DNA of 63,839 nt, counting the filler, from Hyphochytrium catenoides (Eukaryota > Protista > Hyphochytriomycota), in assembly GCA_900088475.1 (NCBI GenBank). It is 5 parts of 5 records of this genome, joined end to end, with 100 filler letters (N's around TTAATTAATTAA, not from the genome) between each part and the next. Parts side by side here need not be neighbours in the genome. Positions count along the whole stretch, not along the records: positions 1 to 27,328 come from FLMG01004473.1; 4 more parts are not named here. The stretch is one strand, 5' to 3'. Of the stretch, positions 1 through 24,736 are shown piece by piece. A program made the position numbers and the translations under genes. The notes under the pieces were generated by a model. It was not told the origin of the DNA, did no database searches, and saw nothing but the letters and a program-made list of their open reading frames with translations. Positions within the stretch are counted from its first letter, which is position 1; each line of letters starts with the position of its first letter.

Positions 1-1023
1 CCGCAAGAAAAGCACATCGTAATGGAACATCAGTTAGACTTACTCGTCCACATGAGACAGGACAAACCCCTTGGTTGTCGTTTTACTGACCCTAACTCTA
101 ACTTTTGAAGGTAATAAGAAGGGCTATCAAACAAGGTTCATTATTATTATTGAAAAAGCTCTACGAGCTGTCGTGCTATTTGTTATTGTAAACACTCGAT
201 GTCAATAAATAGCGAATGGCTTTTTCTCTAACAAAAACTCTATTACTACTACTTGCACTTTTATACTGTCTCTTGGTGGCAACTCTCTCTCCCAGTTCGT
301 CATGCTAGGAAGAAGCGGTAGGCGGCTCAAAAAAAAGCCGACTCTTCCTCTCCTCCTCTCATGATTCATCTTTCTTCTTATTACCCTTCTTATTGTTATT
401 CTTTGCCTCCTCCTTTCTTCCCTCCTTGCACTTAACTTCCGTTGTTGTTGGTCGAACTCTGGCCTTGCTAATTCCTTCCTACCCTCGCTCCTTGCCTGAT
501 GAAGAGTGCTATTATGGTGATGATTGATAAGATAATTGGCATACTAATACTTCGCCTGCTTCTGCTCTCCCTTCTCCTCTTCTTTTCTATTTTTTAAAAT
601 TCTCATCTTTATAATACTTATCTCTTTCCCTAATTACTGTTACTCTGCTCCTCGTTGCTTCTTGGATTGATTCTGTAACAACTCGTTTCTCGCCTTTGAT
701 TTGTATTGATAAATGTGCCGGCGCGGAAGTCTTCTTCTGGAACCTTATAACATATAATGATCCAATGACGTTCATTGTTCTTCAGCCAGCTCTCGAGTTC
801 GTTGGAGGTGTACTCGTCTCCATTGTCGGGCCTTAGAGCCTTCTTCAGACCCTTCCTCTGCTCGTTCTCTGTGAGAGTGATGACAAAGTTCTTAATATTG
901 ATATCTATCAATATCAGACTATCGTTGGAATGATTAGAGCTATGCGCAAGACTTCTGATCTTCCCAAGAAGTTCTGGGCGGAGGCTCTAAACTGTGCCAT
1001 CTAAAGATCTGCTGAATCGCCTG
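1..1023. mobile_element. Degenerate, rearranged Ty1/copia retrotransposon relic (integrase fragments, possible RT fragment)
   Basis: Minus strand ~775-900 encodes IKNFVITLTENEQRKGLKKALRPDNGDEYTSNELESWLKNN (copia integrase LRSDNGGEY motif). Plus strand ~912-1023 encodes YQTIVGMIRAMRKTSDLPKKFWAEALNCAI..LLNRL (LPxxFWAEA..A.YLxNR motif, frameshifted). Minus strand ~45-150 has weak RT-like NEPCL / GFVLSHVDE. Confidence 0.75.
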
Positions 1024-1977
1024 AACCAGTTGGACTAGAAGAAGGCATGATGGTTCCCATCATGGAGGCGGCGCGGTCGGGCCACCGTGTCTACTACTTT
1101 CTCTCACTTTTATGGTATGATGGACTCACAACAAGACGCTGCGACGACGAGCACGAGGACCCGTTAATAACGACCTGAGTCACCTGACACAATTATTGGT
1201 TGCCAGTCATCATGACCCGAGCTTCTGGACTGGGAGCGCCTGTCAAGAGCAGGTCAAGGGAACATCCACCCGTCCAACCCTATTATTCCACATTCTTTAT
1301 ACAGTCACTTTGTACGAGTAGGAAGGAGCATTCTTATGAGAAATGTTCATGTACAGCTCACCGAACCACAAACATCAGCCAACGGCGTCGTACACCCTCT
1401 GGCTTTTTCACAGTTGATAGAACCAACTGACTGATGGACGTATTCCGGCTTTTATTCTAAGGGAAGGCTTGAACAGTAGTTCCTAGATCAGGAGAAGGAG
1501 CTGTCACCCATGTACAGTAAGCCGCAACTCTACTAATAATAACAAGGGCTTGGAAGAAGGAATAACAATAGGTCTACTGCCAAAAAGTCTGCATGTAAGT
1601 TGAAGAACGACGGTCTCAACATCACGGCATCTCATACAGAACCCCCGATGGATGACCTAGAGAAGAGGGAAGTTTGATGTCGTGCTGTCGCCTGTCTCGG
1701 CTCTCTTCGCCCATCAGCCAGCGGCGCGCATGATCAGCGAGGAGCTCCTGAGCCCTACTATAGATCTACATGCTTCACAGCGTCCCGAAGTCTATATTCT
1801 ATAGCGTCGCGCAGCCAGTGCCACGACCCACCCTCCGTGTCTTTTCTGGACAGGAGTCGGGCGCCGCAAACCCACCAAGCGCCCCTGGCGACTGTGGCGG
1901 TTGGTGTCCAGGCCCGTTAGCTAGTCCTGTTGTGGCAAGCGCTTGGACTCTTCTCGAGGTCATACGATTTTTTGAAG

Positions 1978-4558
1978 ATGTCGTCAGGACAGAAGGAAAC
2001 GCAGCCAGAAGCGGAAGTCGCCGCCATGATAAACAAGAGTCCAGATACAGGAGCTGGCAGCATTGAGCACCCACCTGCCCTCGAGCTGACAGTAACAGCG
2101 GCAGCGGACGATCAAGTGATCGAAGGAGAGAGTACCCTGGCTGAGACCATCCCCGGGGAACTTGAGACGAGATCTACTGCTGCACAGTCACATCCGCCAC
2201 AGCAGATCAACGAGCTAGAGCCTTCTTCCCGAGCTACCGATGGATTGGAGCCCTCATTAGAAACTATTAAGCTCCGTAGTGGTCCCGACAACGCTGGTGG
2301 GACCACTTACGAAACGCAAGAAGCTCAAGATGGGATTCCAGCTGTTGATGCCACTGCTACTGCTATAGACCGTGGTCAGGTGGAGGGAAGGGAAAAGAAG
2401 ACCAAGGAAGTTGCATCCACTGAGGCTCAGCAAGTGCAAGCCGGGCCAGCAATCGTGGTAAGAGCTTTCATATAATCTCCCCTCCTTAAGCTACCATCCC
2501 CTGACCGTTCCAATCGCTGTCCGTCAATGCGCTCCCGCAGGAACTTGCTTCGCAGAATGATTACCTCATGGCTGGCACGTCTGAGCCTGTCTTACTGAGA
2601 TTTAGCTCAGAAGGGCTGCACTGTCAGCCTGGGAAGAAGAAAAGCATCCAGTACCACATAGAAGGCAAGGCACATATGTATAGTTGCGCTCGCAAGATCT
2701 AACAACCCCCGTTCCTGGGTCTTGAGCACGACTCCTTTCTCCATCTTATGCTAACTTCTCCAACAGATATTGTGGGTGCATCCATCGGAGATGATATGCG
2801 GTCGCTTGTCATCCATTGTTACCCTCGCAAAGGGAAGTCAAGAGTTCCTGTCGATGTTCGGCTAGTTCTGCGCTCGACCTCTAGTCCCGAACTACTCTCT
2901 AAGTGGCAAGCGCGGATCTTGAATACTCTTTATTCTCCGCAGAACATAGAAAGCGCCGACTGTCCAAAGAAATATGTGCGTTATATCAAGCTCTTCTGCA
3001 GCCAATTTTCGTCATCGCTCTCTCTCCCTCTTCCTCTTACAACCATGTAGTATCTAGTAGTCTTGGGTTCTGCCCTCAACAATAGCTGTCCGCTCGGGTC
3101 ACTTCTTATGTATGCTTCCAGAGAAAATTCATCTCTGGTCAAGCGCCTTCTCATCTCTCTCACCACAAATGCCCCTTCCTTATCTACCATATTCACCACC
3201 AGCGCGTCTATGTCGTCGTGAATCCTATCGGCGGCAAAGGTAAGAAATGAATCTTGTTACGGCGGCACTATTGGCAAGCCCAATCACGAATGTTTGTTAT
3301 GCAGGGCAAGGAATAAAGATCTGCAAGCAGATTGTGATACCATTGTTTACAAAGGCGCACATGGACGTCACTGTCGCAGAGACACAGCGCGCAGAGCACG
3401 CGGTAGCCCTCGCTAGAGATCTGGACCTCGCAAAATACGACGCTATTGTGGCGGTGGGAGGAGATGGAGCTCTATGGGAAGGTGATGAATACATTCGGAG
3501 CAAGGTCAGTCGGCAATATTCAACAGACGTCTAATCTGAATATCTATAGTGATTCAAGGGCTCTATGAACGCCCTGATTGGAAGACGGCTCTGCGTATGC
3601 CTGTTGGGGTAAGCTACCATGCAAGGGCAGGTGTTGTCCTCCTGATAAGTTAACAGACCTGTAGGTGGTACCAGCGGGGTCAGGAAATGGCTTGATTGTC
3701 TCCCTGATGCATGCCCTAAACGAACCGAGCTTGAAGGATGCCACACTTGCAGCGCATATGCTCTCCAAGAGAGAGACTCACCCTATGGACCTCATGGTGG
3801 CAGGTAGGCAGCCTTTATATTCGCGATGGGTCTTCGCTGCGTCTAACATGCCACCTTCGGACCTTTAGAGACGATGGACAAGCTTTACTGCGGGTTTCTT
3901 GGCTTTGAGTGGGCCTTTATTGCAGACGTAGACATTGGCTCCGAGAAGTATCGGTACCTCGGAGGAGCAAGGTTTAGCGCGGCAGCTGTCATGAAGCTGA
4001 TGGGACTGAAGAAGTACCGAGGAAAGCTATCCTATCAGGAGTTGGACAACAGTGAGGCCAAGCCTTACTGGGAGACGGCCTCTGAACAGGACAATCTCAA
4101 GTGCTCTCCACTCCCTCCGCTTACCGCGCCCGTCCCGGAGTCATGGAAGACCCTTGAAGGTTTACATTCTTATTTATTATCGTGGTTCAGAACCATTGTC
4201 GTGCTTGCTAACCTCATATTTAGGGGACTTCATCAATTTTTGGGCTGTCAGCCCCAGTCATTGTGCATCGGATGCATTCACAAACCCTGGTGGGAAGCTT
4301 CACGATGGAAATCTCACCCTTCTGATACAGCAGACTGGAGGTAGGGCCGCTCTGAGCTCAATGTTTATGGGGCTAGAGAAGGGCGAGCATTTGAAGCAGA
4401 AACATCTTAATGTTGTTAAGACAAGGGCGTTCAGACTAGAGCCAGAGAGTGGTCTTGTCTGCATTGATGGAGAGCTCCTTCCCACTGCACCCGTCCAAGT
4501 TCGAGTCTACAGTCAGGTTATTAACCTCCTTGCACGTAGCCAGCTGTACAAGTCCTAG
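1978..4558 (+). CDS. SPHK: Sphingosine kinase (DAGK-catalytic family), multi-exon, with low-complexity N-terminal extension
   Basis: Spliced exons give RVYVVVNPIGGKG, YDAIVAVGGDGALWE, VPAGSGNGL, FLGFEWAFIADVDIGSEKYRYLGGARF and CIDGE, the conserved sphingosine kinase blocks. Stop TAG at 4556-4558. Confidence 0.92.
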
Positions 4559-4605
4559 TCCATAGTGTTACTAATAATAGAGTTACAAGATCTCAATTGC
4601 TGCCA

Positions 4606-7600
4606 TCAATCAAAATCCTCTTCATAACCAGCCTCACTTATTGCAGCAGGAGAGGCAGGTGTCTGCAGTCCGCCCTGCTTCTGACTGTCGACTATGTTCT
4701 CTACTATTATGCCCTGCTCCTCTGTAGGGCCCACAGTGCTAGCCTCCACCAATTGGTCTAGAACAATTTTGGTTTTTGGGTTGGTAGGCACCAACGTTTC
4801 CTGGATAGGCGCTGCTGAAGGTGGCTTGAGACCAGTCTCCTCTGTCATGAAATCTTCGCCATAAATATCCGCCTCCTCCCCCCGATCTTGTGACCTTAAC
4901 TGATGATCTTCTCTTCCTTTCTCGTTCGCCCGAGCATTCCCTTCCTCCACCTCTAGAGTTTCCTCATTACCTATCTCGTGATTGACTGTACTACCTGCCA
5001 AAGATGCCTGACCAGGATTCAGGATTGAAGACACTTGGGAGGGTCCTTGCGGAGAGCACTCTGAAGGTCTTTCTGAGTGTGATGATGACGAAGATATAAC
5101 TTGGTCTGTCGGGGCGATGAAGTCGTCTTCATAGGAGCTGCTTGCTTCCAAGTTCTCTGGTTCTGGACCCTCATGACTAGATTGCCCCCTTTTTGGGGGT
5201 TCATAGCTTGGCTCTATTGAGTCACTTACTGGCTTATGATTGAGGCCTTCAGGACGGTCATCCATGCTATCCATACTTGGCGCTTGCGGGTGTGTAGCAG
5301 TGCTGTTTGCAGAAGCTTCATGACCAATAAGGTGCGCTGGATCCTGTGTTGAATCTGTCCCATTGGACAACCCAGAGGAGTGGAGGAGGTGATCCTGAGG
5401 ATCATCATATTGACCCTCAGCGATAGAGTTTTCCTTGAAGTGGCCACCTCTAGATTCGAGAGGGTCACCCTGTTCCGTTCTTCTCCATTTTGGTAACTCG
5501 CTCGCGGCATCACTTGAAGCGACTGCCTGTTGGAGATCTGGTGCTTCTGTTACATCTGCGATGGTTCCTAGTGGCTCACTTTCTCTTCGTGGTGGTGCAG
5601 GCGGTGTGCTATTGTCAGCCTTTACTGAAGGCTCAGCCGTCACTTCCTCTTCCACTTTTTCTTCTTCTACTCTTGGCTTCACTTCCTTCACCACATGTTG
5701 CAGCCATAAGCGAAGTGCACGAGTGGCGACTGGCACATCGTCCATTGTTTCAAGCTGAAAGTGTTCTGACTGCATAAAGCGAATGACTGCGTCCCACTTG
5801 GTAGAAGATGTGCCCTCTTGCTTACTTTGCAATGTTTTTGCCTGCTGTGCCAGTCGCAGGAGGATATTCTCATCTTGCAACACAGTTTTAGCAGTCGACC
5901 AGATAAGGGGGAACTCTCCTAGTGCAGCGCAAACCGCTCCAAGCACCGCTGTCGTAGATTTTGAGGGTGTTCCAAGGTGTAGGAGAGGAATGACCTCTCT
6001 CCTAGACAAGAAGATCGAGGTGTGAATCTCTATTTCTGTATCCAAGTCCTTCTCGCTGCCGGCATTCTTGACTATAGTAGCCTTCGAGGGGTTAGGATCT
6101 TGCGATGTGCTCAAAGAGGTGTGTTGACTTAGACTCTTTGGTCCATCGCTTCCTGTGGAGCTTAGTCTGGCCTTCTGCTTCTCTCTCATAGAAGGGGTTC
6201 CTGGTCCTAGATTCCCAGCAGCATGACTGCCTTCTTTCATTTCGAAGGCACTACATCGTGAGCCTAGAAGCCTGCGGTCCTCCTTTTGTAAGCATGGCAC
6301 AGCACCTGACTCTTTGTGCTTACAGGAAGCGTCGCCCTTGGGCTGATCCTCACAATTCAGCAAAGGTTCTCTATGAGCCTGCGAGGGGCTCGATGCTGGT
6401 CTGTCCTTCATAGTTGGCGACTGATTGGGGAAGCGATGAGGACTCTTCTTGCAAGGACTGCGCGACATCGCGCCGGGGCTCCTTGACTTGGTAAGCTTGA
6501 CTGTGTACGGCGCTGCTATTTCCTGTTCAGAAAGTGAGTCAGAAGGAGGGAGAGAGGAGATGACGAAGTGAAGATAAAGGCAAGTCTGGCAGCTACCCGG
6601 ACAAACTCTTCTATCTCAGCCAGGGGTTTCTTCTTTTTCTTCTTAAGGTTGCTGTCATGCACGACGGGTGCTCGAGCTTGAGCACTCTCTTGGAGCTTTT
6701 TGATCCTTTCTGTGTGTGGGAGAGCAGAATGGTCTGATTTAGGAAGAAAGCACCATAGTACATATATGTTTGAGCGCGAGACCTGCGGTGATGCGGCGAA
6801 GCTCCTCCTGATCTCTTTCCCATTGTTCTAGGAGCTTATTCTGTTCAGCCTTCCTCTGCCTGATTTGCTCATCTTTCTGTCTTTTCCACGCCAGATATGC
6901 CCCAGAGTCTGTTGTAAAGCTGGAGTGTCAGTGCTGGCATGTCGAAAAAGAGGTCATCTCGGGTTCGTTCAATACCTTGATTACTGCTCTTGCCTTTGCT
7001 CTTGGTCTGAGGTTCCTGTTGCTTTTCTACTGATTGTGCTCTCTTTGGAAGATAGTCGAGCGAGAAACGACAGAGACGTGGGAGTTAAGGAGAGATAGAC
7101 TAAGAGCTCTGGATAAGGAAGAGTTCCGTAGGGCGGTACAAGACTAGAAGAAGAATGAGAGACCAAAAAGCACCTGCTCTCTAAGCTGCTGGTCCTTCTG
7201 CATTTTCCATGCTCTCCAAGAGGCTTCGGCTTCCTCCTTTCTCTGCTTGTCCTCCTTTGCTGAGCGACGGTCCGGTGAAGACTCATCAACATTTCCGCTA
7301 TGTAGAGTGGGCAGCCGGCCCGTCCCTACTCGGCTGAACGTAAGTTGAGAAGATTAGTTTGGCATAGGAAGAATTGTACAAGATCCAACTGAGACGCGGA
7401 CCTGAAGGTAGACTTGCCCCTTTGAGGATCCTTGGCCCCGCCAGACGGACTGGCCGGTGAGATGCTTCCCGAAGCCAATAACTTATGACCGACTGCTGCA
7501 GGAGAAAGAGGAGCCTTGGCTAGAAGTTGCGCAGGCTTGTCATTGGTTGCTCGTACAATTGTCCAGCTCTCGGTCACATCCCTTACCTGCCACCGCTCTC

Positions 7601-7701
7601 ATTGCCTCCTGCTCTTTCTTAGGAATCAGCACCAGCTGCTGATAGACCTCCATATGAGACACGCGCTGGCGGGAGCCCGCTGGCTCTGCTGTCGGGATCA
7701 T
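4606..7701 (-). CDS. Uncharacterised multi-exon protein with WKxQKD charged repeats, a dynein-stalk microtubule-binding-domain-like region and acidic YEDDF motifs
   Basis: A 620-codon terminal ORF (4606-6468) plus upstream exons that I could splice in frame with GT-AG introns from ATG 7701 (MIPTAEPAG...) through ~6780; the last joins were not traced. Confidence 0.7.
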
Positions 7702-8119
7702 CTTGAGAATTGAGATTGTTCGTCCTATTGATGAGTGGCGCTGCTGGTGGAATTAGTGGTTCACGTCAAGGATATGCCATCACAGCTGCCGCTGGAGCTT
7801 CCTGCACCAGCTCGAAAAGGAAACAGGCAGAAAGGCCAGCACGGATGGACAGAGGGCGGGGGGCCGATACTGCAGCCCCTGCCTCATTGTACGCACTCCA
7901 GAATCATCCTCCGGCCCGCCAAGCTGCAGCCCCGGATTTAAAGTCTAGAGACAAGAGCCATAGCCAAGATGTCGTCCGGAAGGAGCTGCGGAAGGACAGA
8001 ACAACCGAGTGGCAGCCGAGCAGCACTCACCCGCGGGAGAAAGCAGAAAGATCATGGAAGGTGAACAGAGGTCGAAGACAGAAAGACTTTTAGACGTAGA
8101 CTGGGTGAGATGGACGGAG

Positions 8120-8339
8120 AGGTAGGAGAGAGAGAGAGGCCCCGAAGCGCTTTAAGATGTAGGGAGAGGACATATAGAAGCAACTTGAGACAGAAATGTA
8201 GTCAGAGAAATGAAAGACGAGATAGGAGAAGAGAGAGAGAGGGATGCGGAAGAGAGGGAGAGAGAAAGGTGAGGGAGGAGGAGACAGATAGCGAGGCAAG
8301 AGAGGAGAGAGAGAGAGCAATGCAGAAGAGAGGGGGGAA

Positions 8340-8372
<33 letters not shown>

Positions 8373-8381
8373 GAGAGAGAG
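8120..8381. repeat. Imperfect (GA)n/(CT)n microsatellite in the divergent intergenic region
   Basis: GA dinucleotide runs visible directly, most perfect at 8340-8381. Confidence 0.85.
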
Positions 8382-8753
8382 TAGGATTATTGATTTTCCT
8401 TTGAATGCCAAGAAAAGAAGAACAAGAGTAACGCCTTTTCTAGCCGTTAGCGACCTCTGTCGTTTGGGAAGCAAGGTGAAGGGTGAAAGGACACACTGAT
8501 GCCTCATCGGTCAGGCGGGAGAGTGATGATGCTGCAAGGACATATTGCCAGATGTCCACGGCAAGAGCAGACGAACAAGGTCGTCTCTAGACTCTTTGGC
8601 TATCCTGGATGGCTTTAGGTCCTTATCAAGCATGGGCAAAGCTCTAGTTCGGTGCCTGATAATGGTTACCATTGCTTAATGATGTGACTGAAGCATGCGG
8701 CGAATCAGGAAGCGGTGAGGAGCACAAGGACGCTTCCTTATCTGTCAGAGAAA

Positions 8754-13520: not shown

Positions 13521-14256
13521 TTTTAATTAGAGGAACCTCTCTGTTGTTGATCTGCAAGAAGAAATGTAGAGGTTGACAGCAGATTTCCATAATGCAGTTA
13601 TCACCGGTGAGAGAAGGCTAATAATAGTACAGTAACTCGACTGAAAGATTTTGCAGTAGTTTGATGTCCAAAGTGTTCATTATTCAAAATAGAGTAAACT
13701 CTTCCTATGAAGATTCCAGATTATGGCTTGCCCCAGTCAGAATTTGACCGTTAGAGCTTCTCTCATTTCCAAATTTGGTGTTCACTTTCATCTGCAGAAA
13801 GGGAGTGGTCATCTAGTGCTACTCGGGTCACCTTATTCGGGTCGTTGATGTCAACACCTATTTGGGGGCTGTGATTACTGGCTAGCCCACAGCTTTGATT
13901 ACTGAGAAGATGCTGGTAACGGATGGATCTAGAAGATGGTTTCTGTGGGCAAAACCATGATAGGAAGATAAGAAGCAGAAGCAGGGAGCCGTGAAGCTCT
14001 CACGCCGCGCTGATGATGGAGCAGGCGGAGGAGCTACTGCTACCGCTCGCAGGGAACAGACAGGGAGCGGACACTGGTACAGCACAAGTGAACATGTCCT
14101 GAAGAGAACGCGTGATGCAGGCTTCCTGACGGGCCAACGGTCCTCGCACCTTTGAACCGACCCGTGTCCAATGAGAGCTAAAATATTAGGCGCAATACCA
14201 CTACACCTTTACCCCAGCCCACCGGAGGGAGTCAGCCTTGCTTAGAGGCCATCAAG

Positions 14257-16361
14257 ATGGAAGAAGACGAAGATGAAGAAGTTGCTTGTGCTTATAGCAT
14301 CATACTGCCTGAGTTGGCCACAAGTCTTGATCCAAACCATCAGCGGCACCGACCTCGACCCAAACCAATCACCGTGAGCGAAACCATCCCTCTAAAGAGG
14401 ACAGGAGGTCGTCTCGGAGAGAAGCGAATAAATAGCACCGCAAGCTCAGCGCTGTCTAGAGGTGAAGGTGAAGTGTTTCCTCGAACTTTGGGCGCAAGAC
14501 AACAGGCGAAAGACCGGACTTTGGGGTCAAGCGATGCGGCAAGTACCTCGTCCGAACAACAACTCCGAGCAGCCAGGTTGAAACAATATAGAATTAGACA
14601 CCGGGGACTCACAACCGCCCGTCAAGAAGAGAGGCGATTACAAGCGGAGGCGGCATCCTCTAAAGCGGCTCGTGAGCAGGCACTTAGAACGAAAGAGACA
14701 GAAGGTAGGCTCACCTTTAGTCAAACAAGAAGCATCCTATGCTGGTGCTGACACTCCCATAGCCGGATCTCGTATCCTAATTGGCCCTAAAAGCAGTGCT
14801 TTCTCTACAAATAATTAGAAAAATTGCGCACGGATGCCGTGAGAAGAGAGCGAGATGCAGCTGCGACGCGAATCCAGTCCATCGTTCGAGGCAGACTGGC
14901 TAAGCTTCGGACGGAGAACTTGAGATTTGCACGGCAACATTCCAGACGTAAGGAAGCTGCCGTAAAAATACAAGTAAGGTCATACTTCTATTTTCTCGAT
15001 CCCTTTTCATCAGGACGCAAGAAGGATTGATCCTCAGTCAACATCCAGGCTTGGGCTCGTGGCAACCAAAGCAGAGTAATCTACCGCCAATTGAAAGCAG
15101 CGAAGGAAAGTGTACAGCGCAAGTCGAGGCATAATGAAAGTGCTATTAGAATTCAAGCGCTCTACCGAGGCCACACCGTGCGAAGACGGAGGCGGGAGGA
15201 GGTCCGCCAGTACGCACAAAGAAACAGAAGAGATGTGGCCGCAGCAATCATCCAATGTACCTACAGGGAGTACCAGCAGTGGAGAAGGGAGTGCCTCGTC
15301 ATCCTTCACAATTCGTCTTTAGAATCCTCGAGACTGACAGCTAAGCAGAGCGGTCAAACCCCACAGGTACACCCATACACCATCACCTTCTTAGATATCC
15401 GCTACTGACACTGACATCCACACGCAGGTAGCTAAAGAAGATCACATAATGCCGGAGCAGATAAACGCAACAGAACATCCTCTTATGCCCCGTAGTTGTG
15501 AGATGGGGAAGCACGACGAACTTCGCACTACTTCTCCAGCCTGCCCTCCTTTCTTAGGAGATACGGCTAGTGGTGACAGTCATAGGTCCATTCAAGATAA
15601 TACTAAGCCCGTTAGAGACTACTCAGACTCTTTGCCAAGGGCCAAGTGCAGTCTGTGCTCCAATGGCATCCTAGGTTCGGACTATCATCTTCTTCCCCTC
15701 TGTCTCCAGCTTATGAAGGTGAAGTTCTGTATCACGTGTGTGCGGAGAGTTAGCGACTCATCCCGCCGAAGAAAGACCCTCGACATCACGCGCGAGCTCA
15801 AGAACCTCGCTCAGGTGGACGAGGCTCTCGAAGCCGTCACCGAGCAGCTTGAGCTCCTCAGCAGACAGGCAGAGATTATAAAGCTAAGATTGCAAAAGGA
15901 GCGGGAAATAGAGGTAAATAAGACCTGGCCTGACCTTGCATCGTCTTCGACTCCACTGCTCTGTTCAACCCCTCTGTTCCACCTTACAGGAGGCCCAGAA
16001 GCAGCTTCAGTTAGTCTGCGAAAAGAGCCCAGATAAGACCTTGACGGCAGCCGCAGTCAAATTATTGAACGACAGAAGCACTGAAGCTTTATTAGGAGCA
16101 GCCGAGACAGAGTGCTCAAAGCCAGTTCCTCTCGTGCTACCCGAACTACGAGATAGACAAAAGAGACGCAGTAGGAAACAAATCAAAGAAGCTCGGCGAA
16201 GCCCTCCACCACCACATTCGTTCTCTTCTACTTGTAGCCCTCTGAACGGGCCACTGGCCTCACCGCAACGCAGTCCCCTCACCACCAAGGCAGAGATGAA
16301 GAAGAAGAAGAACTCGGTTACGCTGCCAGACATTTTGTTAGGACGGCAAGCGCATCGGTGA
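14257..16361 (+). CDS. Multi-IQ-motif calmodulin-binding protein with coiled-coil C-terminal part
   Basis: IQ motifs AATRIQSIVRGRLAK, AAVKIQ/AWARG (split by an intron), AIRIQALYRGHTVR and AAIIQCTYR; exons joined by short GT-AG introns. Confidence 0.8.
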
Positions 16362-20814: not shown

Positions 20815-22985
20815 ATGAACGATCCGTTCGCAGACCTTCTCTCTCCTCCTCAGCCTGCTCAGCAGAATATGCCTCCAAACCCGAACAATGGGTTCCGGAC
20901 GAATGGTCAACAACCAAGTATTGCTCCCTCTATGGGCGCAATGGGAAAACCTAATCCATTTAACACTACCACCATGGCCAACGCCCTCCCTCAGCGCCCG
21001 AATCCAACCGTCCAGGTGAACAACAGCGCCTTTGACCCACTAGCCGGCTTTGGCGCGTCCAACATGCAGAGAGGTCCCATCTCCCCTGGAATGTTGACGG
21101 GCCCAATCTCACCCCCGGCCAGTGGGTTTCCTATGTCACCAGTAGTATCTGTAGGGTCCCCGATGATGCAGCCGAGCCCGGTAATGATGAGTCCCACCCA
21201 GACCGCAAGCCATTCTCAACTACTGCCACCTTCGGCACCCGTTAATGACATGGAATCGATCTTTGGCATCTCCAGCCCCAGGCCGGGTGCTCAGGCACCA
21301 GCGCCTGGTGGATTGCCACTCTCGCCAACAGCCGGAGCCGGGAAATCTGAAGCTCTTCAGAAAAGGATGGCTTCAACCACCAAGACCCAAGTAGGTCTAT
21401 TTGACTTTTCGACCGTGAAAGAGATTACACTGACATTGACATTGTGTTGCAGGAATCCGCAAGACTCGGGGTAAACTTCGCAGCGTTTGCGGCTTCCCCA
21501 GCTGCTCCCGGCTCTTCTATCAAGCCAGCAGCACCTACAATCTCACAACCACAATCTCCAGCTACTAACAGCCGTATGTTGCATTTTCTGGCCTGTGTGA
21601 TTGAATGAGGCTCACCATCCGTTGCCTGTCTACAACAGAGAACATCTTTGGCTCAACAACGAGCTCTGGCAGTAGCGGTAGCCAGAATGCCCCTCAACAG
21701 ACTGTGCAGACATCTTCGGCCGCAGACTTCTTCCAGAAGGCTGGGTCTCGCGACTCTGGGGCAGAGTCAGATGGTAAGCATTCTGCCCTGACAAATCAAT
21801 GGGAATTCTAACCTGATTGCTACCAGATTCTGATGACGAGGAGCATGAATCCAACCACGGAGGTAGTTCAAGTGATTTTCATGGAGCCATCGAGAGCTCC
21901 GTTAATAGCGATCGGTTTGCTAACCCAGATGAGGGAGAAGACACCGAGTTCAGGTTCTCTGTTGGGGAGAACGCTGTTAAGTCTATTCAGGAAAACGAGT
22001 ACAATGCAGTCTTTGAGGAAGGTGTGTTACGAATGTCAACACGCTAAAGTGGACAACACTAACTGGAACTTGAATAGGAGTTAAGCTTGGTGTTCTAATG
22101 GAGAAGGTTGACCAGTGGGATGAGAAGAAGAAGGGTCGGTCAGAGCAAGCAGTCGTCAAGCTCGTAGTGGAAGGCGGTGCGGCAGACAATGCTGGCGTAC
22201 TCGTTGGGAGCATTGTGATCGCCGTTAACGAGCGCGACGTTTCCAAAGACAGCTACAACGACATTTTGGACATGCTTCGGACTGCTCCACGTCCTCTTAC
22301 GGTGCGGTTCGCCAAGCAGAAGGTGAACGAGGACCCATCAGTTCAGGGAGAGATCCTTTCTCGCGTATCCAGTAAGTGCACGAACATCAGGAACAACCAG
22401 GGGATGTTGGCTTACATAGGCTCTCTTGTCTAACTTCTGCTGCTTGCAGACGGAACCTTCAGTGTCGGTAACTTTAAGTCTGGCAGAGCGCAGTGGGTCA
22501 GCAAATACTATGCTTTTGGTGGGGCGGAGGCCGATATTCTGCAGCTCTTTGTCTCTAGACAGAAATATCATGAGGTAAAGAGACATTGCGTTTAGAATGC
22601 CGCTGTTCTCTTATGGACTGACTCGATTTATCCAGTGCGTCATTGCATTGTATGAAAACCGCCAAGTCACTACGCAAATTCATACCTTCCGGCTGAGTCG
22701 TGACCATCAATGTGGCCGCATCAAGAACAAGATGTATAAGAACTTTGGTATGTCGTCAGTAATAAGCGCCGGCACTACGATGGCAACGGAACCTCACAAT
22801 CACCCTTATCTCTAGGCCATCTTTACTATTTCTCCCTGAAGGTTCCATCCCTACGGTTCATCCCCGCCAAGTTCGCTTCCCGAGATCCCAACCAACTACG
22901 AGCCCTTCACACTCGAATCGTCAAGATTATCGACCAGAAGCGCAGGGAGTGTGCGCAGGCGATTGCCACCGGTGGCGTATACTAA
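20815..22985 (+). CDS. Pro/Ser-rich protein with a PDZ domain and a C-terminal PH-like region
   Basis: FEEG/KLGVLME...VVKLVVEGGAADNAGVLVGSIVIAVNERDVSKDSYNDILDMLRTAPRPLTVRF is a typical PDZ. C-terminal exons (WVSKYYAF...YYFSLKV...KFAS...LRALHTRI) have a PH-like pattern. Stop TAA at 22983-22985. Confidence 0.82.
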
Positions 22986-23131: not shown

Positions 23132-24736
23132 CTATGGATTATCCTCTGCGGGATCCGATTGCTCCATATTGCCGCATATCTCCTTCACACACCGCCACTT
23201 TTTCTGCAGAGAAGCGAAGAATTAAATGAACCTTCTCTTAAAAGTACTAAGTCTCTCCGTCGACGTACCTCAAAATCACTCTTCCACAGCCGAACAGTGC
23301 CATCGTCACCTGAGGAAGCAAGAACTGTTCCGGACACATTCCATTCCACTCGCCAAACCTAAGAAGGGAATATAAAGGCCACATTAGAACCCTAACGGCC
23401 GCACACCTGTTCACAGCTCCCTACCTCTGCCTGATGGTGGTCTTTGCATGCTAGCTGTTCTATCGTATAGTCAGCTTGTCCTTCTCGCTTACTTAGTTTC
23501 CATATTCTTATGGTATGGTCCTTGCTTGCCGTTGCCAATAGATGGTAAGATCTATACGAGAGTTATCAGGACACAACTGACAGCTGCTGAGTCCACGAGA
23601 CGGTACCTGCCCATGTTAGGAGCCCACGCAACGTCGTGCACGGAGTCTGTATGACCCACTAAGTCTGCTAAAACTTGCCATCTTCTATAGGAGTCGTTGA
23701 ACCCCCACACCTGCCACGCACCAGAGTCATGAGCTAGCATACTGCATCAAATGTTTGCAGTCAAAATACCTTAGCCGTCTCGCTATTGCTCCCTACCAGG
23801 AGCATCGGAACATCGAAGCGTGACTCATTCCAAGCTAAACAAGTTACACCTTTTTTGTCAGCTTGAAACTCCTCCTGCAAGAAGTCGGAATGTGGGAAAG
23901 AGTCCATAACAGGATCCTACTTCTCTTTGCTTATGAAACAGAGTATACCTGCAGTGGCCAGTGTGATATGTTCATAATGTCGATCGCCTCATATATCCGC
24001 ACGTAGCCGTCTGCGGATGCGGTAGCCTACAAAAGCGTAGAGTCAGGTGCCTTGGTTTACATCTCAAGGACCTAGCTGGGAATATACCAGTCTAAGGCCG
24101 AAGTGCTTTGGGGCGAACTTGACATCGGTTACTGAGTCTCTAGCGTCTACCAGCTGTGCTTGGCTCTTCCATTTCTCACCACCTACATCAAGGAGACCAT
24201 CTAGCATTTCATCTGTTAGTGATCGTAGTCTATAATAAGCAACCTAAGTTACTCTCACCTTGCTCCTCCCATATTGACACAGTTCTGTCGAATGAGCAAG
24301 ATGCGATTATCTTCAAGTAAGAGAAAGTGTGTTTAGAGCTGAAGTATATACTTGCATCGGCTAGTCTTTGGCTCACCTGGCCGAACTCTGGATGAGCCCA
24401 TGCAAGCTTCCAGACAGATCCTTGATGTGCATTCCACTCTGATACTTGTGTCCAACGACCATCGGGCCCACAATCCCAAACCTAGGGGACAGTTAGTATT
24501 GAAAAGCAGCCACCAGCTTGCTGTCATCTTTACCTTAATCTTGCGGTCAGAAGAGCAGCTTGCCAATCTCTTGCCATAGAAGTCATAGGCAACATCGTGG
24601 ATGAAGTCCCCATGATGGGTAGGAAACTGGCGGAAGATCCTCTACAAGAGTGACATCAGTTGAGCCCTTCGTGTAACCTTCACAACTACTGAGCAAGCTT
24701 AGCGACTGATATGCACGGGCCTTAGAAACTCACCAT
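23132..24736 (-). CDS. SEH1: Nucleoporin/GATOR2 WD40 protein Seh1
   Basis: Spliced product includes [81 protein letters not shown] and [26 protein letters not shown]. Confidence 0.95.

What the first reader, a model, noticed from the sequence alone, without database searches (positions are those of the whole stretch)
5683..6015. Stand-alone dynein microtubule-binding-domain-like module in a motor-less protein
Seen: an island of ~110 ordered residues in a disordered protein: FLSRREVIPLLHLGTPSKSTTAVLGAVCAALGEFPLIWSTAKTVLQDENILLRL...IRFMQSEHFQLETMDDVPVATRALRLWLQHVV. From memory this follows the dynein heavy-chain stalk MTBD pattern (L.K.DI.E.KS...PP..V..V.EAVC.LLG....W..AK..L.D..FL..L...Y...P.F.PE.V...S.A...LC.WV.A; Pfam MT, PF12777). 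No AAA ring or long stalk coiled coil flanks it. Inference: a dynein foot co-opted as a passive microtubule tether or competitor, a candidate undescribed ciliary or cytoskeletal system.
Basis: partly seen in the sequence, partly recalled or inferred. Interest (0 to 1): 0.8.

Follow-up and report, generated by a model that had tools for sequence, protein, structure and literature searches.

The report
Motor-less protein with dynein-foot-like domain
The last exon of a roughly 850-residue, mostly disordered protein of an unidentified eukaryote carries a ~110-residue helical domain that looks like a diverged copy of the microtubule-binding "foot" of the dynein motor, with no motor attached; that arrangement has not been described as far as I could find, but it rests on one genome and no expression data.

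Summary
ORF 4606-6468 (-) and both quoted peptides are there, and residues ~150-265 form a helical island between disorder-type flanks.

The dynein MTBD reading is supported by several weak-to-moderate lines, not by a standard profile hit.
- For: BLASTP against two cytoplasmic dynein-1 MTBD fragments gives E 3e-8 and 3e-5 (single comparisons), colinear over H1-H6 and the CC2 proline.
- For: Smith-Waterman scores 85 against about 29-35 for shuffles, including conservative ones (P 1e-5 to 1e-7).
- For: the only PDB phmmer hit is a dynein MTBD (E 1.4).
- For: language-model neighbours of the whole domain, and of its second half alone, are PF12777 clusters.
- For: a model folded without any dynein sequence still draws dynein MTBDs as top Foldseek rows.
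- Against: no Pfam PF12777 hit at E<=10, no phmmer hit in 1.84 billion proteins, hhalign probability 25%.

The ORF is not a whole gene. It is the last exon of a multi-exon gene (about 845-863 aa). The N-terminal half is basic with a short coiled coil; the tail is very acidic with three Y-x-[DE]-D-F motifs. No AAA ring or long stalk exists, and there is no room for one.

Microtubule binding is inferred, not shown. A ciliary role is untested. No relatives or RNA data were found.

The parts
4606..6522 (-). Terminal exon (exon 6) of the gene, 638 codons plus stop.
   Evidence: The frame stays open 18 codons upstream of the ATG, back to an AG acceptor preceded by a pyrimidine tract. The only exonic indel between haplotypes is in-frame, 3 nt at 5042.
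5644..6051 (-). Dynein-MTBD-like domain with short helical stubs on each side (ORF residues 140-275).
   Evidence: BLASTP and MAFFT alignments to cytoplasmic dynein-1 MTBD fragments are colinear. Shuffle tests. PF12777 neighbours in the atlas. PDB hit 3j1t. Fold searches.
5980..6006 (-). H1-equivalent helix (SRREVIPLL); the RR pair aligns near the KK pair of dynein H1.
   Evidence: Alignments; coordinates.
5914..5955 (-). H2-equivalent helix (TTAVLGAVCAALGE), carrying the C..LGE motif that is invariant in the dynein rows.
5875..5904 (-). H3-equivalent helix (IWSTAKTVLQ), with W and a basic residue aligned to dynein. There is no flap insertion between H2 and H3.
   Evidence: The flap is defined in PMC6629372.
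5770..5871 (-). H4, a loop 4 residues longer than in dynein, and H5. The only haplotype variants inside the domain (K211K, T212I, S221P) fall in this loop.
5668..5730 (-). H6-equivalent helix (VATRALRLWLQHVV, W aligned) followed by KEVKPRV, whose proline aligns with the conserved CC2 proline. This stretch is 6 residues shorter than in dynein.
   Evidence: The conserved prolines are cited in PMC6629372.
4609..5643 (-). Acidic disordered C-terminal tail (about 350 aa, net charge -47) with three Y-x-[DE]-D-F motifs at 5119-5133, 4849-4863 and 4612-4626.
   Evidence: Haplotype differences here are mostly non-synonymous.
6597..6709 (-). Predicted exon 5 (RIKKLQESAQ...KKKKKKPLAEIEEFVR).
   Evidence: GT/AG borders and a consistent frame. 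The 1-nt indels between haplotypes lie in the flanking predicted introns, at 6548 and 6746.
6783..6908 (-). Predicted exon 4, a charged helical or coiled-coil segment with the AYLAWKRQKDEQ motif.
6976..7042 (-). Optional 67-nt mini-exon (model A). Model B instead extends exon 3 to 7164.
   Evidence: Both models keep the frame open. They cannot be told apart without RNA.
7174..7333 (-). Predicted exon 3, with the SWRAWKMQKDQQ motif, a near repeat of the exon 4 motif.
7402..7495 (-). Predicted exon 2.
7587..7701 (-). Predicted exon 1 with a candidate start ATG at 7701 and a strong GTAAGG donor.
   Evidence: No coding-like ORF or Pfam domain lies further upstream on this strand.

Best explanation
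Window 4606-7701 (-) is a six- or seven-exon gene for a lineage-restricted protein of about 845-863 aa. Its terminal exon encodes a strongly diverged homologue of the dynein heavy-chain microtubule-binding domain. The domain has six short helices H1-H6, is of the flap-less type, and keeps only stubs of about 15-20 residues of the stalk helices, including the CC2 proline. There is no AAA+ ring, linker or long coiled-coil stalk. The module most likely arose when the stalk-tip exon(s) of a dynein heavy-chain gene were copied or captured into another gene and then diverged to about 17-20% identity. Shown here: the gene structure (by sequence logic and haplotype indels), the colinear similarity, and the absence of motor domains. 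Inferred: the domain still folds as an MTBD and contacts the tubulin intradimer groove as a passive, nucleotide-independent microtubule-binding module. On that reading the basic N-terminal half (net +25, with a short coiled coil that could dimerise) helps binding, and the very acidic tail (net -47) opposes or regulates it. The tail's Y-x-[DE]-D-F motifs recall beta-tubulin C-terminal tails (my recollection) and could act as an internal decoy.
For: Targeted similarity: BLASTP E 3e-8 and 3e-5. SW 85 vs about 29-35 for all nulls, P 1e-5 to 1e-7. MAFFT places all six helices, both tryptophans, the C..LGE motif and the CC2 proline in register, with one 4-residue insertion and one 6-residue deletion. 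Unbiased searches agree. The sole PDB phmmer hit among 177,635 sequences is the dynein MTBD chimera 3j1t, in register. 33 of 40 atlas neighbours of the domain are PF12777 clusters at 0.94-0.95 with 177-182 shared features. The second half alone again gives PF12777 clusters, at 0.89. Foldseek with the dynein-free single-sequence model ranks dynein MTBDs 1, 2, 4 and 5 of 350,542 chains. In a six-frame scan of the window with a dynein-only HMM, this ORF is the top hit. Motor-less: no Pfam domain in any exon or in upstream ORFs, and only about 3 kb separates exon 1 from the divergent VPS9 gene. Real gene: a 638-codon open exon, frames consistent over five or six GT-AG junctions, and 1-nt and 4-nt indels between haplotypes confined to predicted introns while the one exonic indel is 3 nt.
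Against: Pfam PF12777 gives no hit at E<=10. phmmer against 1.84 billion representatives gives nothing at E<=0.001. hhalign against a shallow dynein-1 profile gives only 25% probability, E 8e-4. HMMER scores are only 8-13 bits. The only usable 3D model (pLDDT 63, pTM 0.50) was built with dynein rows in the alignment, so its dynein matches are circular. The CC1 proline is not at the expected place, and the residue aligned to the H6 arginine of the dynein rows is aspartate. The domain is slightly acidic overall. Haplotype differences across the ORF are mostly non-synonymous (19 of 23), so constraint is unproven. No orthologue, transcript or organism name was obtained.
Confidence: 0.7

Rival explanations
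1. Decaying relic. A fragment of a dynein heavy-chain gene was captured into a fast-evolving, largely disordered orphan gene. It keeps recognisable sequence but has no microtubule-binding or other selected function.
For: Non-synonymous changes dominate between haplotypes (19 of 23 listed). There are no detectable orthologues. One putative microtubule-contact position in H6 is acidic and the CC1 proline is missing. There is no expression evidence.
Against: Fold-determining positions (C..LGE, both W, hydrophobic pattern, CC2 Pro) survive at about 17-20% identity, which implies long retention. The three variants inside the domain all fall in the H4-H5 loop and none in the helices, though the numbers are small. 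The 638-codon frame is intact in both haplotypes, with an in-frame indel only.
Confidence: 0.17
2. Unrelated small helical domain whose similarity to the MTBD is coincidental or convergent; its real function lies elsewhere.
For: There is no Pfam or large-database hit. hhalign gives 25%. HMMER E-values are around 1, the same level as obviously random hits such as FGF23 and CRABP2. The VIA note warns that helical bundles reach Z 8-13 by common arrangement. Non-dynein chains also match the guided model at Z 7-8 and TM 0.71.
Against: The end-to-end colinear alignment has P 1e-5 to 1e-7 under conservative nulls. Four different unbiased searches each rank dynein MTBDs first, which would be an unlikely coincidence.
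Confidence: 0.1
3. The exon belongs to a genuine dynein heavy chain whose other exons lie outside the ORF.
For: None beyond the domain itself.
Against: The upstream exons encode short charged and disordered segments with no AAA or dynein domain. The gene ends at a stop 47 nt from the convergent kinase gene's stop. Only about 3 kb of non-coding-looking DNA lies between exon 1 and the next gene. No dynein domain occurs anywhere in the 27 kb. The flanks of the domain are disordered, not coiled coil.
Confidence: 0.02

Closest known systems
Dynein heavy-chain microtubule-binding domain (Pfam MT, PF12777; structures 3ERR, 3J1T, 6RZB, 6KJN)
   Same: It has six helices in the same order and a flap-less H2-H3 junction. 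The C..LGE motif in H2, W in H3 and H6, the E-N at the start of H4 and the proline after H6 are aligned. Dynein MTBDs are the best structural matches.
   Different: Identity is only about 17-20% and falls below Pfam detection. There is no long CC1/CC2 stalk and no AAA+ ring, so nucleotide-driven registry control of affinity is not possible. The CC1 proline is absent, the post-H6 segment is 6 residues shorter and the H4-H5 loop 4 residues longer.
DNAHX / DNHD1-type non-motile dynein heavy chains (PMC11785096)
   Same: Both are dynein derivatives that have given up motility.
   Different: DNAHX keeps the whole heavy chain and ring but has a disrupted stalk-MTBD. Here the situation is reversed: only the MTBD survives, in an unrelated disordered protein.
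Non-dynein chains that match the guided model: 9ya2_L on Toxoplasma intraconoidal microtubules, 9fqr_Xl in the bovine sperm 96-nm repeat, and a 577-aa Chlorophyta Dpy-30 protein cluster in the ESM Atlas
   Same: They have compact helical domains of about 115-120 residues that superpose on the model at Z 7.3-8.2 or TM 0.71. 9ya2_L is part of a microtubule-bound structure, and its size and numbering fit the globular domain of ICMAP2 described in PMC12819142.
   Different: The matches were made with a dynein-guided, medium-confidence model, and at Z values that helical bundles reach by chance. No sequence similarity was tested. The chain identities are my inference. The papers I read do not call these domains dynein-like.

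Membership tests
Dynein heavy chain stalk/MTBD (Pfam MT, PF12777) | Match to the Pfam profile at or above its gathering score | tested here: not met
   No PF12777 hit at E<=10 for the 620-aa ORF, the 638-aa exon, or the 160-aa and 121-aa pieces. HMMER filters may hide hits with E above about 0.1.
Dynein heavy chain stalk/MTBD (Pfam MT, PF12777) | Six short helices H1-H6, colinear with dynein MTBDs | tested here: met
   BLASTP and MAFFT alignments run from H1 to H6 with one 4-residue insertion. The helix pattern in both AF2 runs matches. Significance by shuffling is P 1e-5 to 1e-7.
Dynein heavy chain stalk/MTBD (Pfam MT, PF12777) | Universally conserved prolines at the CC1/MTBD and MTBD/CC2 borders (PMC6629372, citing Imai 2015) | tested here: inconclusive
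   The CC2 proline aligns (KEVKPRV vs KRVEPLR). No proline lies at the CC1 position; the nearest is about 27 residues upstream of H1 (sequence).
Dynein heavy chain stalk/MTBD (Pfam MT, PF12777) | MTBD three-dimensional fold | tested here: inconclusive
   The guided model has pLDDT 63. It matches dynein MTBDs at TM 0.55-0.71 and Z 7-12.3, but it was built with dynein rows. The unguided model (pLDDT 41) still ranks dynein MTBDs first, at E 0.5-0.9 and TM about 0.3.
Dynein heavy chain stalk/MTBD (Pfam MT, PF12777) | Basic microtubule-contact residues in H1, H3 and H6 | tested here: inconclusive
   The RR in H1 and K in H3 align with dynein K/R. The residue aligned to the arginine before H6 in the dynein rows is D. 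Which residues make contact is taken from my knowledge of Redwine 2012 and from the K3299 mention in PMC6629372.
Dynein heavy chain (motor) | Long antiparallel coiled-coil stalk (about 100 residues each for CC1 and CC2) | tested here: not met
   Only about 15-20 helical residues lie on each side, followed by proline- and serine-rich disorder.
Dynein heavy chain (motor) | Ring of six AAA+ modules, with linker and tail | tested here: not met
   No AAA or dynein Pfam domain occurs in any exon, in upstream ORFs or elsewhere in the window. The predicted protein is about 850 aa.
Microtubule-associated protein (functional class) | Binds microtubules | not testable with these tools
   Needs co-sedimentation or localisation experiments.

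The most novel reading that the evidence does not exclude
This protein represents an unrecognised class of non-motor microtubule-associated proteins that use the dynein foot as their microtubule-binding module. It would occupy the same tubulin intradimer site as dynein, and so could act as a roadblock or competitor. It would be held in check by an acidic tail that mimics tubulin tails. Similar modules may already sit unnoticed in microtubule-bound proteins such as the Toxoplasma intraconoidal MAP chain 9ya2_L.
Probability: 0.2. Interest if true: 0.8.

Novelty: new variant of a known kind. Interest (0 to 1): 0.55.

Why it matters
In everything I could find, the dynein MTBD occurs only at the tip of a heavy-chain stalk, where its affinity is set by the ATPase ring. 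A free-standing copy would show that the foot can be reused as an ordinary microtubule-binding domain. It would also provide a natural minimal MTBD for biophysics, and it would suggest a way for cells to block or compete with dynein at its own binding site. It also shows that language-model and pairwise evidence can recover a domain that Pfam and billion-sequence phmmer searches miss.

Tried and rejected
- Pfam on the ORF, the domain and every predicted exon gave nothing relevant.
- The word-index search with the 620-aa and 160-aa queries gave nothing.
- The full phmmer search of 1.84 billion representatives gave nothing.
- The metagenome locus search gave nothing.
- The exact-product look-up found nothing on record.
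- The sequencing-run search found DNA runs only, with a coded organism and no RNA, so the transcript test could not be done.
- Single-sequence AF2 was unusable as a model (pLDDT 41).
- The second half of the domain against PDB gave only a random CRABP2 hit.
- MAFFT with many first-half-only dynein rows misaligned the second half, so I used a smaller set.
- hhalign and HMMs built from the available dynein rows are weak, because those rows are all near-identical cytoplasmic dynein-1 sequences.
- I tried to place the organism with an atlas search on the WD40 exon; it returned generic WD40 clusters only.
- I considered Sfi1-type repeats for the W-x-x-W-K motifs and Dpy-30 for VIPLLHLG. Both were rejected: the wider consensus is absent and Pfam gives no hit.

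Full report
**What is there.** The window piece is eukaryotic DNA of about 50% GC with short introns. It has no Rfam match at gathering score.

ORF 4606-6468 on the minus strand (620 aa) exists as described. The flanks are 60-75% disorder-promoting residues, and the island is more hydrophobic. Both AF2 runs predict six helices in it.

**Gene model.** The ORF is not a whole gene.
- The frame stays open 18 codons upstream of the ATG, back to an AG acceptor with a pyrimidine tract at 6523/6522.
- Further upstream on the same strand, five or six short exons join with GT-AG borders and consistent phases: 7701-7587, 7495-7402, 7333-7174 (or to 7164), optionally 7042-6976, then 6908-6783, 6709-6597 and 6522-4606.
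- Both variants translate without an internal stop, to 863 or 844 aa.

Contigs of three DNA runs of the same coded organism show a second haplotype at about half depth. Its 1-nt and 4-nt indels fall at 6548, 6746 and 6968, all in predicted introns, and a 3-nt indel lies in an intron at 7146. The one indel inside the exon (5042) is 3 nt. That supports both the intron calls and a maintained reading frame.

No RNA run holds the sequence, so the model remains an inference.

The protein has three parts:
- a basic N-terminal 384 residues (net +25), with two similar W-x-A-W-K-x-Q-K-D-x-Q motifs in charged helical exons and a K6 run;
- the roughly neutral domain;
- a 351-residue tail of net charge -47, carrying YEDDF, YGEDF and a C-terminal YEEDF.

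**Is it motor-less?** Yes.
- None of the exons, nor any upstream ORF on that strand, has a Pfam domain.
- The gene's stop lies 47 nt from the stop of a convergent DAGK_cat/YegS_C kinase gene.
- A VPS9-like gene on the other strand (recognised by eye, not run through Pfam) starts about 3 kb beyond exon 1.
- The rest of the window holds an IQ-repeat gene, a PDZ gene, a SEH1-like WD40 gene and an integrase relic.
- Nothing dynein-like occurs elsewhere in a six-frame scan.

**Is the island a dynein MTBD? Standard profile tests say no.**
- Pfam shows no PF12777 hit at E<=10.
- phmmer against 1.84 billion representatives finds nothing at E<=0.001.
- Two word-index searches, a metagenome scan and an exact-product look-up are blank.

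**Other lines converge on the dynein MTBD.**
1. ESM-atlas feature search of residues 145-275: 33 of 40 neighbours are PF12777 clusters, at scores 0.94-0.95 with 177-182 shared features. Residues 203-278 alone again give PF12777 clusters, at a weaker 0.89.
2. phmmer of the core against all PDB sequences returns one hit, the dynein MTBD-SRS chimera 3j1t, in register over H1-H4. Its E-value is 1.4 (0.77 for the first half alone). That is not significant by itself, and it sits among random hits of similar E.
3. I seeded a word search with that printed fragment and obtained cytoplasmic dynein-1 MTBD fragments. BLASTP of the 160-aa piece gives 35.8 bits, E 3e-8 against P0046 and 28.1 bits, E 3e-5 against P0087, each for one comparison. 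The alignments run from H1 through H6, and in P0087 on to the CC2 proline.
4. Smith-Waterman scores are 85 and 78, against 29-31 +/- 5 for full shuffles (P 1e-7 to 4e-6). Against local shuffles and block permutations the means are 30-35 (P 1e-6 to 4e-5), and reversed sequences score 25-28.
5. MAFFT on full-length MTBD rows reproduces the same colinear alignment. The C..LGE motif, both tryptophans, the E-N of H4 and the CC2 proline are in register, with a 4-residue insertion between H4 and H5 and a 6-residue deletion after H6.
6. Foldseek with the dynein-free, low-confidence model still ranks dynein MTBDs 1, 2, 4 and 5 of 350,542 chains, though at E 0.5-0.9 and TM about 0.3.

**Weaker or circular evidence.**
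- hhalign against the shallow dynein-1 profile gives 25% probability, E 8e-4.
- A dynein-only HMM picks this ORF as the best of 609 six-frame segments, but at only 8 bits.
- AF2 with five dynein rows in the alignment gives pLDDT 63 and pTM 0.50. Its matches to dynein MTBDs are TM 0.55-0.71 and VIA Z up to 12.3. These are expected from how the model was built, so I do not count them as independent evidence.

**Differences from a working dynein foot.**
- There is no long stalk and no ring, so the registry-shift control of H1 described for dynein (PMC6629372) cannot operate.
- The CC1 proline is missing.
- The H1 basic pair and the H3 basic residue are kept, but the position aligned to the arginine ahead of H6 is aspartate.
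- The domain is slightly acidic overall.

Microtubule binding is therefore a reasonable inference, not a result.

**Constraint.** Between haplotypes, 19 of 23 listed coding differences are non-synonymous, so the disordered parts look close to neutral. The three differences inside the domain (one of them synonymous) all fall in the H4-H5 loop and none in the helices. The numbers are too small to prove constraint.

**Mechanism proposed.** The stalk-tip part of a dynein heavy-chain gene was captured into another gene and retained as a passive microtubule-binding module. The basic N-terminal half, and possible dimerisation through its short coiled coil, would help binding. The acidic tail would oppose or regulate it. 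The tail's Y-x-[DE]-D-F motifs resemble the acidic, aromatic end of beta-tubulin; that resemblance is from memory and was not tested. I put homology to the MTBD at about 0.7-0.8 and retained microtubule binding at about 0.4.

**Comparison with what is known.**
- Text searches found no description of a stand-alone dynein MTBD in a non-dynein protein.
- DNAHX is a non-motile heavy chain that keeps the ring.
- VIA and the atlas fold search raised three non-dynein leads:
  - Chain L of 9ya2 on Toxoplasma intraconoidal microtubules. Its numbering fits the globular domain of ICMAP2 described in PMC12819142.
  - Chain Xl of 9fqr.
  - A Chlorophyta Dpy-30 protein cluster.
- These leads score Z 7.3-8.2 or TM 0.71. 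They are not tested, and such scores are within what helical bundles reach by chance.

**Limits.**
- The organism is unidentified. It is a heterozygous diploid or dikaryon, and near-identical 151-nt contigs occur in a rhizosphere metagenome.

Noticed in passing
window 4500-8000: DNA runs of the same coded organism carry a second haplotype at about half depth, with roughly 1-2% differences and small indels. The organism is therefore a heterozygous diploid or dikaryon, which may explain the fragmented assembly. Two 151-nt contigs from a rhizosphere metagenome match at 7132-7448 with one difference each.
   Followed up: partly
window 4558-4606: The stop codons of the convergent kinase gene (+, 4558) and the target gene (-, 4606) are only 47 nt apart, so their 3' UTRs must overlap or be very short.
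   Followed up: no
window 7174-7333 and 6783-6908 (-): Two consecutive exons carry a near-repeated motif (SWRAWKMQKDQQLR and AYLAWKRQKDEQIR) inside charged helical sequence. There is no Pfam match, and it is not a canonical Sfi1 repeat.
   Followed up: partly
window 5119-5133, 4849-4863, 4612-4626 (-): There are three acidic-aromatic motifs (YEDDF, YGEDF, YEEDF) in the acidic tail, the last at the C-terminus. They are reminiscent of beta-tubulin C-terminal tails (from memory). The binding partner is unknown.
   Followed up: no
window 8000-8500: A purine/pyrimidine-skewed low-complexity stretch (GC skew +0.29, AT skew +0.23; RERE/SLSL-type translations) lies upstream of the predicted first exon. 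It may be a promoter or UTR region.
   Followed up: no
window 14182-16361 (+): A gene with several IQ calmodulin-binding motifs (Pfam IQ, E 6e-9) and long charged or disordered segments.
   Followed up: partly
window 24233-24641 (-): WD40 exons that, from memory, resemble the nucleoporin SEH1 more than SEC13. Pfam reports WD40 only.
   Followed up: partly
window 22074-22430 (+): A PDZ domain exon (PDZ_6, E 5e-9).
   Followed up: no
window 633-986 (-): A weak integrase-core (rve) relic, suggesting a decayed retroelement at the start of the piece.
   Followed up: no
PDB 9ya2 chain L, PDB 9fqr chain Xl, ESM-atlas Dpy-30 cluster (not in the window): Non-dynein chains and clusters superpose on the MTBD-like model about as well as some real dynein MTBDs (Z 7.3-8.2, TM 0.71). 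One of them sits on Toxoplasma intraconoidal microtubules. It may be worth checking whether these are unrecognised MTBD-like folds.
   Followed up: partly
P0001 (Logan contig product): A 176-aa product contains two tandem copies of the cytoplasmic dynein-1 H1-H4 exon, about 80% identical to each other. It may reflect alternative or duplicated exons in some animal dynein gene.
   Followed up: no
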